DNA of 64,000 bases from Scyliorhinus canicula (lineage: Eukaryota), in the NCBI RefSeq assembly GCF_902713615.1, contig NC_052170.1:4216001-4280000 (forward strand). Reading direction: 5' to 3'. Position numbers and translations under genes: made by a program. This document shows, one piece after another, positions 8,332 to 48,589 of the stretch (the first letter of the stretch is position 1; every line of letters begins with the position of its first letter). The notes beneath the pieces were generated by a model that did not search any database, was not told the DNA's origin, and saw only the letters and a program-made list of their open reading frames with translations.

Positions 8332-9204
8332 TCAGTAAGCCACAATGGCTCGCACCCAGATTCCCAGTTTGCTGAGGACTCGGTCCCGGCAGATTCCCGG
8401 GGAATCGCTCTGCCCTTTGTTCAGGAGGCCGCTGAATCCGGAGCTGAACACATTGACCAGGCTGGGATTGCTGGAGCTTTCCTGGTCCGGGGCGGCTTCC
8501 CGGGAACAATCCTCCTCCAGCCGGGCTCTCTTCCTGGGCAGACATTCCAGAGGCTCCCTCTGATCCCAGCCCTTCCTCCGCTTCCTGCTCCTGCTTCCCG
8601 CCGCTTCCCGGGGCTCCTGGCCGGGGCAGAGACAGCCATTCCCGGCCAGAGGCTCAGCCACAGGGCGCTGGGCAAACTCAGACACTTTGTCCCGGCCGCA
8701 ATGGAGACATTCCCGGCGCTGGATACAGTCCTCCTGGGATTGGACAGAGTGGGAACCCGGCTGGATACATTCCTTTTGGGATTGGATACACTCCCGGGGC
8801 TCGATACAGTCCTTCTGGGATTGGATACATTGCTGGAACTGGATACATTTTTCCTGGGATTGGATACATTCCGTTTGGGATTGGATACATTCCTGAGATT
8901 TGATACCTTTTTCCTGGGATTGGATACATTGGGACTGGGCCGCACACTCCTCGCCTTTCGGCCTCGCCTCCAGTCCTCCTCCCTCCGCAGCCTCCAGCTC
9001 CATGGCCGGGGCCTCGGCCTGGCTCCCCCGGCCGGCCTCCTGCTGCTCGGCTCCAACATTCAGATAAACATCGCGGGCGCTGCGCAGCACCAGCGACAGT
9101 AAGAGGCTCCTGTGCAGCCGGATGCCTCCCCTCTGCAACCGGGAATTGTACATCTTCCCCAGGGCCACAGCCATCACCCTCTGAGCTTCCAGCTTCACAT
9201 CCAT
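8332..9204 (-). CDS. IER2: Immediate early response protein 2-like, intronless (ORF also open from an upstream ATG at 9234)
   Basis: N-terminus [48 protein letters not shown] is the IER-family motif. The C-terminal [14 protein letters not shown] and RAIVAY* match the family end. ATG at 9204 is in a GCCATGG Kozak context. IER2 rather than IER5 is assigned from synteny with STX10/NACC1/TRMT1. Confidence 0.9.
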
Positions 9205-9321
9205 GGCAGGGGCAGCTTCACTCCTTCCTTCCATCTGTCTGCTTTCTCAACCCTCTCCTCTGTCTGCTCTGCTCTCCCCTCCTCTGCCGCGCCTTCAACC
9301 TCCGCTCCCAGCCTCCTCCCT

Positions 9322-42659: not shown

Positions 42660-43952
42660 TTCTGGCCTCACCCACAGGTGGAAACATATTTTGTAATTCA
42701 GCTTATTAAATCTTTTCACAATTTTAAAGGCTCTGGCAGGTATTCCCCCCTCCCCAGTCTTCTCTTTTCACAGAACACAGCCCTGTGCTGATATGTTCTG
42801 CCCTCTCAGGGTATGTCAGGTGGCAGGAGTTTGAAGAAAAGCTGGGGAATTCTGCCCACTGGCCTGGCCAAAAACAAACAAGCTGGTCATTATCTCACTG
42901 CTGTTCGTGGGGGTTTTACTGTCAGCAAAATGGCTGCTGCATTTCTTGCATTCCTTCACCTCAAAAAGTGCGTCATTGGTTGGAAAGTATGGGCTACTTC
43001 GTGCTATGTGGGCGGAACAGCAGCAGAGTGGTTAGCACTGCTCCTCCACAGCTCCAGGGTCCCGGGTTCGATTCCCGGCTTGGGTCACTGTCTGTGCGGA
43101 GTCTGCACATCCTCCCCGTGTCTGCGTGGGTTTCCTCCGGGTGCTCCGGTTTCCTCCCACAGTCCAAAGATGTGCAGATTAGGTGAATTGGCCGTGCTAA
43201 ATTGCCCTTTGTGTCCAAAAAAAAGTTAGGTGGGGTTACTGAAAATGAAATGAAAATCGCTTATTGTCACGAGTAGGCTTCCATGAAGTTACTGTGAAAA
43301 GCCCCTAGTCGCCACATTCCGGCGCCTGTCCGGGAGGCTGGTACGGGAATCGAACCGTGCTGCTGGCCTGCTTGGTCTGCTTTAAAAGCCAGCGATTTAG
43401 CTGAGTGAGCCAAACCAGCCCCATCGGTTACGGGGATAGACTGGAGGTGTGGGTTTAGGTAGAGTCAGTGCCGACTCGATGGCAAATGGCCTCCTTCTGC
43501 GTTGTAAATTCAATGAATCTCTCCAAGTTCTCCCCGTGTCTGCGTGGGTTTCCTCCGGGTGCTCCGGTTTCTTCCCACAAGTCCCGAAAGACGTGCTGTT
43601 ATGCGAATTGGACATTCTGAATTCTCCCTCAGTGTACCCGAACAGGCGCCGGAATGTGGCGACTGGGGGATTTTCACAGTAACTTCATTGCAGTGTTAAT
43701 GTAAGCCTACTTGTGCCAATAATAAAGATTATCATCACATGTGGGTCAAACATTCCCTGTCACGCGTGGACCATACACTGCCCGTCATGTGTGGATCAGA
43801 AACTCCCTGTCACTTGTACAAACATTTCCCAACACATGTGCATCAAACACTTCCTGTCACGTGTGCACGAAACAGCTCCTGTGTGCTCGGCCTGGTGTCA
43901 AACTGGGCAACATGGGCAAATGTTCCTCCTGCATGAAGAGTAGCAGGCTTAC

Positions 43953-44784
43953 CTGGTGGGCCCACATTCATCATGCTGTACATAGTGTACATGTTGCAGA
44001 TCTGTCTGTAATGCTCCTCTGTCATATCCTCACCACCTTCCTCCTCTTCATCCTCTTCGTTCTGGTAGGAGTTGGGACTGTCGCTGGTGTAGGCGCTGGA
44101 GGTTCCAGGGCTGGTGCGATCCGTGCTGCCCTGCCCTCCCGCTCCGCATCCCTGCTGCCGGATAGTGGGGGCTCCGTGAGAAACCCGAGCCAGCTTGGAG
44201 GCCGCGCTCCCATTCCCCTCCCGCTGCCCGTTGTCCCACAGACGTTTACTGATGGGGGTGAACTGCACAGTGTCCGATTCGGCTTGCTCTGTCTTGACAC
44301 GTGACACCAGTGAGAGGGGGGTGGCTGCCAGCGATCGCGAGGCCTGAGCCGGGCTCGGGGGCTCAGAGGGCGTCTCCTCCACATGTAGGCCCTGGGAGTC
44401 GCACCGCGGTGAGCTGACCTTCAGGCAGAACTCGGTCTCCTTGTCCATTATCTGCTGGATCTGGAGGAAGCCGGCCGTGTACATCAAGAGGAACTGATCA
44501 CCCATGTTCATACTAAGCCTGCCAGTGTAACAGAACGCCAAGATCTGCTGGAAGGACTGAGGCTGGACCGCTGTCGGAAGCTCGAAGCTCGTGCAATTGT
44601 TGGAGCTGAACAGGTCACGGAAATAGGAACTGCTGGCTGCCAGAACGGCGCGGTGTGCCTTGAAAGCCTGTCCCTTCACAACGATGGAAACATCACAGTA
44701 CAGGCCTTGGAGCCGCTGGTCATTCAGAGATTCCAGGATGTTATTCCCAAAGTTCGGAATCTCCATTTGCAGGGTCTGGGCCAT
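43953..44784 (-). CDS. NACC1: NACC1 coding exon 1, BTB/POZ domain
   Basis: [52 protein letters not shown] is the NAC1 N-terminus; ACCATGG Kozak; acceptor at 44811; donor G|gtaagc. Confidence 0.96.
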
Positions 44785-44985
44785 GGTGTCCGCTCAGCAG
44801 ACTGCAGTATCTGCCAGAATAGAAGAGAAGACAGCAGCATTAGATTTACAAACGTTACATGCAGCATTTTACCTGCAAAAGGCATTTCCTTTCCACTGCT
44901 GGTTGATGGGTTCCACTGGAACCCGGGAGCCAGGCGGCTCGGTCTTCAGGGTCTACTCCAAAACCTAGGCTGACACTCCTAGTGC

Positions 44986-46336
44986 AGTACTGAGGGAGTG
45001 CAGCACTGTCAGAGGGTCAGTACTGAGGGAGTGCAGCACTGTCAGAGGGTCAGTACTGAGGGAGTGCCGCACTGTCAGAGGGTCAGTACTGAGGGGGTGC
45101 AGCACTGTCAGAGGGTCAGTACTGAGGGGGTGCTGTACTGTCAGAGGGTCAGTACTGAGGGAGTGCAGCACTGTCAGAGGGTCAGTACTGAGGGAGTGCA
45201 GCACTGTCAGAGGGTCAGTACTGAGGGGGTGCTGTACTGTCAGAGGGTCAGTACTGAGGGAGTGCTGCACTGTCAGAGGGTCTGTACTGAGGGGGTGCTG
45301 TACTGTCAGAGGGTCAGTACTGAGGGAGTGCTGCACTGTCAGAGGGTCAGTACTGAGGGATGCCGCACTGTCAGAGGGTCAGTACTGAGCGAGTGCCGCA
45401 CTGTCAGAGGGTCAGTACTGAGGGAGTGCTGCACTGTCAGAGGGTCAGTACTGAGGGAGTGCTGCACTGTCAGAGGGTCAGTACTGAGGGAATGCTGCAC
45501 TGTCAGAGGGTCAGTACTGAGGGAGTGCTGTACTGTCAAGAGGGTCAGTACTGAGGGAGTGCTGCACTGTCAGAGGGTCAGTACTGAGGGAGTGCTGCAC
45601 TGTCAGAGGGTCAGTACTGAGGGAATGCTGCACTGTCAGAGGGTCAGTACTGAGGGAGTGCTGTACTGTCAGAGGGTCAGTACTGAGGGAGTGCCGCACT
45701 GTCAGAGGGTCAGTACTGAGGGAGTGCTGCACTGTCAGAGGGTCAGTACTGAGGGAGTGCTGCACTGTCAGAGGGTCAGTACTGAGGGAGTGCCGCACTG
45801 TTAGAGGGTCAGTATTGAGGGAGTGCTGCACTGCCAGAGGGTCAGTACTGAGGGAGTGCCGCACTGTCAGTGGGTCAGTACTGAGGGAATGCTGCACTGT
45901 CAGAGGGTCAGTACTGAGGGAGTGCTGCACTGTCAGAGGGTCAGTACTGAGGGAATGCTGCACTGTCAGAGGGTCAGTACTGAGGGAGTGCTGCACTGTC
46001 AGAGGGTCAGTACTGAGGGAGTGCCGCACTGTTAGAGGGTCAGTACTGAGGGAATGCTGCACTGTCAGAGGGTCAGTACTGAGGGAGTGCCGCACTGTCA
46101 GAGGGTCAGTACTGAGGGAGTGCTGCACTGTCAGAGGGTCAGTACTGAGGTAGTGCCGCACTGTCAGAGGGTCAGTACTGAGGGAATGCCGCACTGTCAG
46201 AGGGTCAGTACTGAGGGAATGCTGCACTGTCAGAGGGTCAGTACTGAGGGAGTGCTGCACTGTCAGAGGGTCAGTACTAAGGGAGTGCCGCATGTTAGAG
46301 GGTCAGTACTGAGGGAGTGCCGTACTGTCAGAGGGG
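44986..46336 (+). repeat. 33-bp minisatellite, ~41 units, NACC1 intron 1
   Basis: Same unit as the array at 26315-26950. Confidence 0.95.
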
Positions 46337-46706
46337 TCATGTCCAATGCAATGTTATCCTGAGGCCCTCAATAAATCCCACTTCAAAACAGATTAGCCAG
46401 TCATTCTAATATTGCCCTTTGCGTACAGAAAATCACAATGGGTTCTTAAATTAGGCCTTATCAACAATTCCCAGGAAAAACTAACAGACCAAATTCTTCA
46501 TTCAGGACATAAGGTCCATGATCTTTTTCGAACAAGCGTTATCCCAGCGTCTTCGCCACGGTTCCGCTCACAAGTCGACACCAGAAACAGGTTAACTAGC
46601 GAGTTAACGGATTGCTATTTGGGGAATCTTGTCCTGTGCAAATTGGACGCCTCACTTTCCTATGTAGCAATAACCACAATTCAAGAAACGTTGCCTCTTT
46701 CTAACC

Positions 46707-47408
46707 CAGGGGTGGGCAAACTACGGCCCGACAAAGGTTTTTATGCGGCCCGCCAATGAGGTGCCCGGAATCATAACCGGCATTTTTGAAAAGCCGCCGG
46801 GGAAAAGCCGCTGAAGTCAATGCGCTTATTCAATAAGCGCATTTACTTCAGCGGCTTTTCCCCGGCGGCTTTTCAAAAATGCCGATTATGATTCCGGGCA
46901 CCTCATTGGCGGGCCGCATAAAAACGCGCGTCGTGGGGTGGATGAGTGGGGCTGTCTCATTGGTCGGTTGAGTTGGGTGTGCGACCAATAGGAGTCCAGG
47001 TTACAAACAATAAGCCTTATTATTGTTTGTAACCTGGACTCCTATTGGTCGCACACCCAACTCAACCGACCAATGAGACAGCCCCACTCATCCACCCCAC
47101 TACGCGCGTTTTTATCGCTGACTGGGCCAGGCTGTGCTTCTGTCAGTGTTAAGGATCAGCACAAGCAACTTGACACCTGATTTCAACAAACTGGTAAATG
47201 GCTGCAGTCAGATGCATCATTCTCATTGACATTGTTCTGTTACTTACTGAGTTACTTTGTTTTTCAAATAAATGTGCTTTTTTTTCTTTAAAGACCTTTT
47301 ATTTTGGCTATTTAAAATATTAATTATTTTACTTAATATACTATGCGGCCCTTTAAAATTGTGAATTTCTGAATGTGGCCCTTGCACGGAAAAGTTTGCC
47401 CACCCCTG
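46707..47408. mobile_element. Non-autonomous hAT (Charlie-like) DNA transposon, 702 bp, with an internal double palindrome
   Basis: 16-bp perfect TIRs CAGGGGTGGGCAAACT/AGTTTGCCCACCCCTG; 8-bp TSD TTCTAACC/TTCTAAAC (7/8). Confidence 0.88.
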
Positions 47409-48589
47409 TTCTAAACCAACACGTGGCTCGTGACTGAGGGGAGAAGAGGACTGGAGCACACGGAGGAAACCCACACAGACAGTGACCGGAATCAAACCCG
47501 GGTCCCTGGCGCTGAGGCAGCAGTGCACCAGAGTGCAAGGGACATTGGTGCGGGACTGGAGTCACATACAGGTCAGACATTCCCTGCAAGACAATAGTGA
47601 ACCAATTGGGTTTTCACAACAACCTGACACCCTCACAGACACTTTCATATTCCAGCTTCTTTTGATTTCATAAATGGAATTCAAAACTACTGTGTTGTGA
47701 TTTGACCTCACGGCCTCGGGGTATTAGTTTACCAGTTCAGGAATATATTTAAAAATCCTTGCGTCTGGATACAGGGGTTATTATGAATCTAATATTTTCA
47801 CCCACCCTCTTGACTAGCAAGGGTGGGGTCAGGTCTGACCAGCAGTGAAAACCATGGACAACAACTTCCCCCCCCCCCGGGGGGGGGGGGGGGGAAGAGG
47901 AGGAGGAGGAGGAGGAGGAGGAAGATATTTCCTTGTGGAAAACAAGTTTTAAACTGCTCTTTTCAGATGTTGACATTGACGGGGCTCTGTCTGTTTCAGC
48001 CTGAATGTGTGACCTCGTGATTGCAACATAAAACTGAGCAACAGTCTCTCCGAGGCAGTCAGCTAGCTTCATAGCTCACAGAAGGTACAAAATCCTGACT
48101 CTCAGACGTGTTTCCACAGAGCAGATGGGAAGTTTGTAACTAGCGTTTGGAACCTGACGTTATTGGTGAGTTCCAAGTTTGGAGCTTATCTTTGGAAAAA
48201 AAAAAGTCATGAAGGAATTGATCTGGGGCAGTTAAAAGCAAACACCGTTAATCACAACGAGGCTCTTTAATTATTCACATTCAATGCAGAGTCTGTCACC
48301 AGCACACAGGAACAGAAATCAGAGCTCAGCAGAGAGCTGGGAATGGAGAAGCAATGGGCCCAATAACTGATCATCTCAAATTGTTCTTGGCACCGACAGC
48401 AGATCTGTCCCCCTCCTTACCCAGCTACACAACATTAACTGCTCTCTGCACAAACTCTATAACTATACTGTGGTACTTTCACTGTTCAAGTGGAAATATT
48501 ATAAAAATTGATCCGGCTGGAGTTTTGCATCAAAACTTGTGAATAATCCCTTGCCCTCTTGATCTCAGTAGATTGAGGGACATCAGTAA

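What the first reader, a model, noticed from the sequence alone, without database searches (positions are those of the whole stretch)
46737..47115. Two abutting ~190-bp palindromes in a hAT element: an inverted, circularly permuted copy inserted into itself
Seen: palindrome 1 spans 46737-46925 (94-bp arms, 1-nt spacer at 46831, 2 mismatches). Palindrome 2 spans 46918-47115 (96-bp arms, 6-nt spacer, 1 mismatch). They overlap on ATAAAAAC, whose complement GTTTTTAT is at both outer ends, and both apices carry CTTATT/AATAAG separated by a single C. Inference: the layout a-a'-b-b' reduces to a parent a+b' joined at CTTATT and bounded by 8-bp direct repeats. The middle a'+b is that parent's reverse complement, circularised through the 8-bp repeat and opened at CTTATT (apart from one ATT). 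This is the footprint expected of a microDNA circle reinserting inverted at its origin, or of three serial template switches. It could extrude a double cruciform, or form two ~95-bp dsRNA stems in NACC1 pre-mRNA.
Basis: partly seen in the sequence, partly recalled or inferred. Interest (0 to 1): 0.82.

Follow-up and report, generated by a model that had tools for sequence, protein, structure and literature searches.

The report
Double palindrome inside a hAT MITE
A 702-bp non-autonomous cut-and-paste (hAT) transposon in a catshark intron contains two adjoining, almost perfect 190-bp palindromes. Their centres carry the sequence signature of a scar left when a second hAT transposon cut itself out, with arms about five times longer than any such scar I found described.

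Summary
Palindrome 1 has 94-nt arms (46737-46830 / 46832-46925, 2 mismatches). Palindrome 2 has 96-nt arms (46918-47013 / 47020-47115, 1 mismatch). They share ATAAAAAC and lie inside a 702-bp hAT-type MITE (46707-47408) with a perfect 16-bp TIR and an 8-bp TSD.

The mechanism is better explained another way. Both palindromes are centred on a single C. Each C is the complement of the outermost base of an inferred 8-bp direct repeat, GCTTATTG, which has TA at positions 4-5 like every TSD of this MITE group. That is the published signature of hAT excision footprints: hairpins form on the flanking DNA, and palindromes are centred on the complement of the base next to the element.

A model of a nested hAT excision, hairpins opened about 95 nt from the tip, and joining at the 8-nt microhomology reproduces all 379 nt, apart from 3 substitutions and one 3-nt insertion.

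Three unchecked notes of this scan describe the same double palindrome at other places in this genome. The event therefore probably predates this insertion. I could not reach any other copy, so the family-level test remains open.

The parts
46699..46706 (.). Left copy of the element's 8-bp target-site duplication (TTCTAACC)
   Evidence: It matches TTCTAAAC at 47409-47416 in 7 of 8 positions, with TA at positions 4-5.
46707..47408 (+). Non-autonomous hAT-type element (MITE), 702 bp
   Evidence: Perfect 16-bp TIR (I5) and an 8-bp TSD. Positions 1-49 and 658-702 are homologous to the ends of 306-483-bp TSD-flanked MITEs in metagenome contigs. Its ORFs have no protein relatives.
46707..46722 (+). 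Left terminal inverted repeat CAGGGGTGGGCAAACT
47393..47408 (-). Right terminal inverted repeat
47409..47416 (.). Right copy of the element's TSD (TTCTAAAC)
46737..46830 (+). Arm a, the original left flank of the inferred break. It begins with GTTTTTAT plus the conserved subterminal motif ATGCGGCCCGCC and ends with t1-t7 of the inferred TSD (GCTTATT, 46824-46830).
   Evidence: The start of arm a is shared with related MITEs, so this arm is ancestral.
46831..46831 (+). Centre of palindrome 1: a single C, the complement of t8 (G) of the inferred TSD
   Evidence: The rule for hAT footprints comes from PMC5873905.
46832..46925 (+). Arm a', the inverted copy of a (2 substitutions, at 46844 and 46885)
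46918..46925 (+). Junction J2: the 8-nt microhomology ATAAAAAC shared by a' and b
   Evidence: GTTTTTAT is one of only two 8-mers shared by the two parental flanks.
46918..47014 (+). Arm b, the inverted copy of b' (1 substitution at 46932). It ends CAATAAG, the reverse complement of t2-t8.
47015..47015 (+). Centre of palindrome 2: a single C, the complement of t1 (G) of the inferred TSD
47016..47115 (+). Arm b', the original right flank. It begins with t2-t8 (CTTATT..G), interrupted by a later 3-nt tandem insertion (ATT, 47022-47024), and ends with GTTTTTAT (47108-47115).
   Evidence: Arm b lacks the ATT, so the insertion post-dates the copying.

Best explanation
The element is a non-autonomous hAT transposon (MITE). 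Its interior carries a fossil, unusually long excision footprint of a second hAT element that was once nested in it.

Inferred history:
1. The ancestral MITE read ...CAATGC-GCTTATTG-TTTGTAACC... at this point.
2. A hAT element inserted there and duplicated GCTTATTG.
3. When it excised, the transposase left covalently closed hairpins on both flanks, as hAT enzymes do, each with one odd base at the tip.
4. The hairpins were opened, or extended by snap-back synthesis, about 95 nt from the tip rather than a few nt away. This gave long 3' tails made of the opposite strand.
5. The two tails annealed at an 8-nt microhomology (ATAAAAAC / GTTTTTAT) and were filled in, producing a-C-a'-b-C-b'.
6. A 3-nt slippage (ATT) and three substitutions followed.
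7. The doubled element was then probably mobilised as a unit and inserted here, in putative intron 1 of NACC1, with its own TSD.

What is shown: the structure, the hAT identity of the host element, and the exact fit of the model to the sequence. What is inferred: the nested element, the way the hairpins were opened, and the order of events.

Today the region can fold into two roughly 95-bp stems on either strand. Any role as a source of double-stranded RNA or as a fragile site is speculation.
For: (1) The host is a hAT MITE: 16-bp perfect TIR, 8-bp TSD, and ends homologous to 22 TSD-flanked relatives.

(2) The two apices carry the same 6 nt (CTTATT) in direct orientation. Each palindrome is centred on one C. 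The base that the other copy shows at that position is G in both cases, so each centre is the complement of the outermost base of an 8-bp repeat GCTTATTG.

(4) The frame fixed by the two axes puts TA at positions 4-5 of the inferred TSD. The same holds for the element's own TSD and for all 22 related complete elements.

(5) A script that builds the product from the inferred empty site under this model reproduces 46737-47115 except for 3 substitutions and one 3-nt insertion.

(6) Arm a begins with the subterminal motif conserved in related MITEs, so the outer arm is the original.

(7) J2 uses one of only two 8-mers shared by the flanks.

(8) Related MITEs lack long internal palindromes, so this is an acquired feature.
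Against: - Only one copy could be examined. No empty-site copy and no copy still carrying a nested element was seen.
- Arms of 94-96 nt are about five times the longest hAT footprint palindrome I found in the literature (20 nt), so the hairpin-opening step is unusual.
- The fit of centre 1 depends on taking arm b (without ATT) as the ancestral state. With the ATT as ancestral, the predicted centre would be T.
- The 1-nt offset of the hAT nick rests on Ac/Ds footprint data and on my recollection of the Hermes biochemistry (Zhou et al. 2004), which I could not read here.
- The multi-copy status rests on three unchecked first-reader notes.
Confidence: 0.5

Rival explanations
1. Replication or repair template switching without any transposon. 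This could be fold-back priming at a stalled fork or at an ordinary double-strand break, with three switches: a to a', a' to b through the 8-nt microhomology, and b to b'.
For: The final arrangement is formally identical. J2 lies in an 8-nt microhomology, as in microhomology-mediated repair. Fold-back inversions are a known class of rearrangement (my knowledge).
Against: The two U-turns have no loop and no priming microhomology. Both centre bases differ from the parental base and are exactly its complement. The two axes are 7 nt apart, giving an 8-bp duplication with a TA core. None of this is predicted by free template switching, and all of it is predicted by hAT hairpins.
Confidence: 0.2
2. 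The same footprint or fold-back event happened in situ, in this copy, after it had inserted in the NACC1 intron. On this view the double palindrome is private to this locus.
For: No other copy is in the window, and I could verify none elsewhere. The arms are still 98-99% identical.
Against: Three other first-reader notes in the same genome describe a hAT MITE with two abutting palindromes of about 190 bp, with spans of 378, 379 and 732 letters. The 379-letter span equals the span here. These notes are unchecked.
Confidence: 0.15
3. A small circle (microDNA) formed from the segment between the two GTTTTTAT repeats, opened at CTTATT, and reinserted in inverted orientation at CTTATT of its own origin.
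For: The middle is an exact circular permutation joined through the 8-bp repeat.
Against: The model needs the circle to open and the chromosome to break at the same hexamer. It leaves the two complementary centre bases and the 8-bp TA-centred duplication unexplained. No step of it is specific to what is seen.
Confidence: 0.05
4. An assembly or long-read fold-back artefact.
For: Palindromes are a known product of chimeric long reads (my knowledge).
Against: There are two abutting palindromes with a permuted join, three substitutions and a 3-nt indel between the arms, all embedded in an intact TIR/TSD-bounded element. The same structure has been noted at other loci.
Confidence: 0.03

Closest known systems
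Excision footprints of hAT elements (Ac/Ds, Tam3, hobo, Hermes, TcBuster)
   Same: Both TSD copies are retained. Inverted repeats of flanking DNA are centred on the complement of the base that adjoined the element. The join is at a microhomology (PMC5873905, PMC3499496, PMC5499845).
   Different: Described palindrome arms are 1-20 nt, whereas here they are 94 and 96 nt. The excised element itself is not observed. The footprint lies inside another transposon that seems to have been mobilised afterwards.
Long P-nucleotide tracts in V(D)J coding joints when hairpin opening is defective (scid / Artemis deficiency)
   Same: Hairpin-capped ends opened far from the tip give abnormally long palindromic additions. 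This is from my knowledge; PMC2715118 was listed but not read.
   Different: Those are somatic, RAG-made and tens of nt at most. RAG hairpins have no odd centre base.
Maize double Ds (one Ds inserted, inverted, into another)
   Same: A hAT non-autonomous element that contains an inverted copy of itself (my knowledge).
   Different: In double Ds the inner copy is a complete element with its own TIRs and TSD, giving A-B'-A'-B. Here the inner copy is circularly permuted (A-A'-B'-B), has no TIRs and produces two abutting palindromes.
Mu killer and the 'Ac killer' composite insertions
   Same: Inverted duplications of transposon sequence that arise through aberrant hAT or Mutator activity. When transcribed from a host promoter they give dsRNA and siRNAs against the family (bioRxiv 10.1101/2020.01.07.897926).
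   Different: Those are kilobase-scale, in plants, and made by alternative transposition with re-replication. No transcription or small-RNA evidence exists here.
Fold-back inversions and microhomology-mediated template switching (FoSTeS/MMBIR)
   Same: Inverted duplications joined at microhomology.
   Different: They usually leave a spacer at the turn, and they give no reason for an 8-bp TA-centred duplication with complemented edge bases.

Membership tests
hAT superfamily, non-autonomous element (MITE) | 8-bp target-site duplication | tested here: met
   TTCTAACC / TTCTAAAC flank 46707-47408.
hAT superfamily, non-autonomous element (MITE) | Short terminal inverted repeats | tested here: met
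   A 16-bp perfect TIR starting with CAG (I5).
hAT superfamily, non-autonomous element (MITE) | Ends homologous to other mobile copies that have their own TSDs | tested here: met
   Twenty-two complete relatives of 306-2408 bp were found in metagenome contigs. All have 8-bp TSDs with TA at positions 4-5 and share about 50-70 bp at each end.
hAT superfamily, non-autonomous element (MITE) | No transposase gene | tested here: met
   The element is 702 bp, its longest internal stop-free frames are 62 aa or less, and two of them have no relatives in two protein libraries.
hAT superfamily, non-autonomous element (MITE) | Several copies in the same genome | not testable with these tools
   There is no second copy in the window. 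Only unchecked notes report three more.
hAT excision footprint | Two copies of an 8-bp TSD remain at the empty donor site | tested here: met
   GCTTATT is at 46824-46830 and CTTATT..G at 47016-47025. The six bases present in both copies are identical.
hAT excision footprint | Palindromic additions centred on the complement of the base that adjoined the element | tested here: met
   The centres at 46831 and 47015 are both C, and the other TSD copy shows G at t8 and t1. The rule comes from PMC5873905. The match at centre 1 assumes the ATT is a later insertion.
hAT excision footprint | Target with the family's sequence preference | tested here: met
   GCT-TA-TTG has TA at positions 4-5, as in all TSDs.
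hAT excision footprint | Short palindrome arms (1-20 nt in described cases) | tested here: not met
   The arms are 94 and 96 nt. This is the respect in which it would be a new variant.
hAT excision footprint | Occupied or empty alleles that show the element was there | not testable with these tools
   No other family copy or orthologous locus could be fetched.
microRNA precursor families of Rfam | Score at or above the family's gathering threshold | tested here: not met
   There are 22 matches to unrelated miRNA models on both strands, all below threshold (for example 73.7 against 105 bits). These are generic hairpin matches.

The most novel reading that the evidence does not exclude
hAT excision can create perfect palindromes with arms of about 100 bp in one step, through hairpin-capped flanks opened far from the tip and joined at microhomology. 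A MITE that acquired such a 'giant footprint' stayed mobile and spread in catshark genomes. It would have seeded introns with ready-made double hairpins about 95 bp long that could feed small-RNA or RNA-editing pathways. That would be a new route from transposon excision to long hairpin loci in a vertebrate.
Probability: 0.3. Interest if true: 0.65.

Novelty: new variant of a known kind. Interest (0 to 1): 0.45.

Why it matters
If the reading holds, this is a natural germ-line example of hAT hairpin ends resolved about 95 nt from the tip, several times longer than any described footprint. It shows how a single excision can create two long perfect palindromes. Such palindromes are potential fragile sites, cruciform formers and sources of double-stranded RNA. 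Inside a mobile MITE they can be copied around the genome.

It also gives a sharp, cheap test: a predicted empty-site junction to look for in shark genomes.

If the reading fails, what remains is an ordinary MITE with an unusual internal inverted duplication.

Tried and rejected
1. Other copies in the window: none, by self-BLAST and a TIR search with 3 mismatches.
2. Protein route to shark assemblies: a 50-aa frame across J2 and a 62-aa frame across apex 2 gave no hits, so MITE ORFs are not in the protein libraries.
3. DNA scans:
   - Viral contigs gave nothing.
   - Prokaryote genome contigs gave nothing in one scan and 5 bacterial matches, taken as chance, in the other.
   - Metagenome contigs gave 120 loci that share only the element's ends. 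These were useful as an outgroup but not as family copies.
4. Orthologous locus: the Scyliorhinus torazame NACC1 homologue was found (98% identity), but its contig has no DNA on offer.
5. Notes of the scan searched by sequence or by relatives: blank.
6. Rfam: only sub-threshold generic hairpin matches, so I rejected a miRNA gene reading.
7. Considered and rejected:
   - The outer GTTTTTAT pair as the TSD of a 363-bp insert: the insert ends are not inverted repeats, and arm a is ancestral MITE sequence.
   - The double Ds layout: the order of segments is wrong.
   - A 6-nt loop at apex 2: that would make the perfect 13-nt mirror of apex 1 a coincidence.
8. I could not obtain the Hermes papers for the 1-nt nick offset.

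Full report
**What is there.** The coordinates and numbers of the finding hold.
- The repeat finder reports two inverted repeats. One has arms 46737-46830 / 46832-46925 (94 nt, 98% complementary, 1 nt between). The other has arms 46918-47013 / 47020-47115 (96 nt, 99%, 6 nt between).
- A direct comparison gives 2 and 1 mismatches.
- The palindromes overlap on ATAAAAAC (46918-46925). Its complement GTTTTTAT lies at both outer ends.
- They sit in a 702-bp element (46707-47408) with a perfect 16-bp terminal inverted repeat and an 8-bp target-site duplication, TTCTAACC / TTCTAAAC.
- The element folds with a z-score of -36 as DNA. The 379 nt fold with a z-score of -42 as RNA on the strand of the host gene.

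**The host element.** No second copy lies in the window.
- A pattern built from the TIR and the subterminal motif fetched 120 metagenome contigs. Their matches to the element cover only positions 1-49 and 658-702.
- Twenty-two of these are complete elements with 8-bp TSDs, mostly 306-483 bp long. Every one has TA at positions 4-5 of the TSD.
- Their two ends are conserved over about 70 bp and align with the ends of our element. This includes the stretch TTTTATGCGGCCCGCC that opens arm a.
- Their internal palindromes reach about 61 bp at most.
- So the element is a member of a widespread hAT MITE group. Arm a is ancestral sequence in its ancestral place, and the long palindromes are an acquired feature.
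- Its open frames have no relatives in either protein library.

Take a+b' as the parent and remove one of the two GTTTTTAT copies. The reverse complement of the middle (46832-47013) is then a circular permutation of that parent, with 179 of 182 positions identical. The description 'inverted, circularly permuted copy inserted into itself' is therefore exact as geometry.

**What the apices say.** Read with a single-base centre, apex 1 is GCTTATT-C-AATAAGC (46824-46838). Apex 2 is CAATAAG-C-CTTATT[ATT]G (47008-47025).
- Arm b lacks the ATT. Arm b was copied from b', so the ATT is a later 3-nt tandem slippage in b'.
- The alternative reading, a 6-nt loop GCCTTA, would make the perfect 13-nt mirror image of apex 1 a coincidence.
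- The left flank thus ends with GCTTATT and the right flank begins with CTTATTG. This is an 8-bp direct repeat GCTTATTG whose outermost base is missing on each side.
- In its place stands C, the complement of the G that the other copy shows.
- The two symmetry axes are therefore exactly 7 nt apart in the reconstructed parent.
- The frame they fix puts TA at positions 4-5 of the 8-mer. That is the target preference seen in the element's own TSD and in all relatives.

**Comparison with known biochemistry.**
- hAT transposases excise by making hairpins on the flanking DNA (PMC5499845; PMC4763223).
[quoted passage not shown] Arms reach up to 20 nt in yeast, and the joints usually lie in microhomologies (PMC5873905). 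TcBuster in cultured cells behaves the same way (PMC3499496).
- The structure here has each of these marks, except that the arms are 94 and 96 nt.

**The model and its fit.** I built the product from the inferred empty site (...CAATGC-GCTTATTG-TTTGTAACC...) in three steps:
1. Left flank, plus the complement of t8, plus the reverse complement of the left flank.
2. Reverse complement of the right flank, plus the complement of t1, plus the right flank.
3. The two joined over ATAAAAAC.

The result differs from the observed 379 nt by three substitutions (46844, 46885, 46932) and the 3-nt insertion only. GTTTTTAT is one of just two 8-mers shared by the two flanks within 300 nt. Sharing at least one such 8-mer is not rare by chance: 0.15 for 124-nt flanks and 0.63 for 300-nt flanks. 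A pre-existing microhomology is therefore a reasonable assumption.

How the hairpins came to be opened so far from the tip is inference. One possibility is a nick by the end-resection machinery on the strand that would carry the 5' end. The other is snap-back synthesis primed by a short P overhang. Both give the same sequence.

**Rivals.**
- Free template switching gives the same order of segments. It predicts neither loop-less turns, nor complemented centre bases, nor an 8-bp TA-centred duplication.
- The circle model needs the circle and the chromosome to break at the same hexamer, and it leaves the same three facts unexplained.
- An assembly artefact is unlikely. The arms differ by substitutions and an indel, and the whole lies inside an intact element.

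**Weak points.**
- Only one copy was seen.
- The centre-1 match depends on the polarity chosen for the ATT indel.
- The arm length is far outside the described range.
- I could not read the primary Hermes papers.

**Where and when.**
- The notes of this scan hold three other first-reader entries from other pieces of the same genome. They describe a hAT MITE whose interior is two abutting palindromes of about 190-200 bp, with spans of 378, 379 and 732 letters. The span here is 379.
- These notes are unchecked and I could not see their sequence. If they are right, the doubled element transposed as a unit and the event did not happen in this intron.
- Follow-up reports in the same genome call it a catshark. 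In keeping with that, the BTB exon in the window is 98% identical to a Scyliorhinus torazame protein.

**Context.**
- An ORF at 43843-44784 on the minus strand carries a BTB domain (E = 1.4e-27). It starts with the NACC1 N-terminus and is preceded by a polypyrimidine tract and a CAG acceptor about 26 nt upstream of the ATG.
- A GC-rich island lies at 53.0-54.0 kb.
- The element is thus most likely in the 5'-UTR intron of NACC1, which is transcribed from the minus strand. This is an inference from gene structure, not from RNA data.
- Rfam gives only sub-threshold matches to many unrelated miRNA models on both strands, which is what any long perfect hairpin would give.

**Verdict.** Its mechanism is replaced by a more specific one: a giant hAT excision footprint inside a MITE, probably made before this copy inserted. 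Confidence is about 0.5, because no second copy could be inspected.

Noticed in passing
window 46000-46329: A 33-bp minisatellite with seven or more in-register copies at 93-96% identity lies directly upstream of the element. The scan's note s1-243580 attributes it to a Deu-type SINE segment.
   Followed up: no
window 46752-47076: Six CCAAT-box-like motifs (RCCAATVR) lie within 325 bp, three per parental half and doubled by the palindromes. The whole 64-kb window has 26, which is no more than chance overall. They look like NF-Y-type sites, but I did not test this.
   Followed up: partly
window 43843-44811 (minus strand): This is the first coding exon of NACC1. It has a BTB domain, begins [14 protein letters not shown], and has a splice acceptor about 26 nt upstream of the ATG, so a non-coding exon 1 must lie further upstream, probably at the GC-rich island at 53.0-54.0 kb.
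   Followed up: partly
window 8332-9234 (minus strand): An intact single-exon IER-family ORF of 300 aa (Pfam IER, E = 6.5e-38), consistent with IER2 as noted by the scan.
   Followed up: no
window 47865-47897: A short palindrome made of homopolymer runs: CTTCCCCCCCCCCC, 5 nt, then GGGGGGGGGGGAAG.
   Followed up: no
loci L005, L017, L020, L023, L035, L081, L096 and others: Metagenome contigs of unknown animal origin, many labelled as gut metagenomes, carry complete 306-483-bp hAT MITEs. Their roughly 70-bp ends are nearly identical to those of the catshark element, and their TSDs follow nnnTAnnn. This end type is therefore widespread well beyond sharks.
   Followed up: partly
window 46752-46759 and 47069-47076: A second 8-mer (CCAATGAG) is shared by the two parental flanks and lies closer to the break than GTTTTTAT, yet the join used the outer one.
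   Followed up: no
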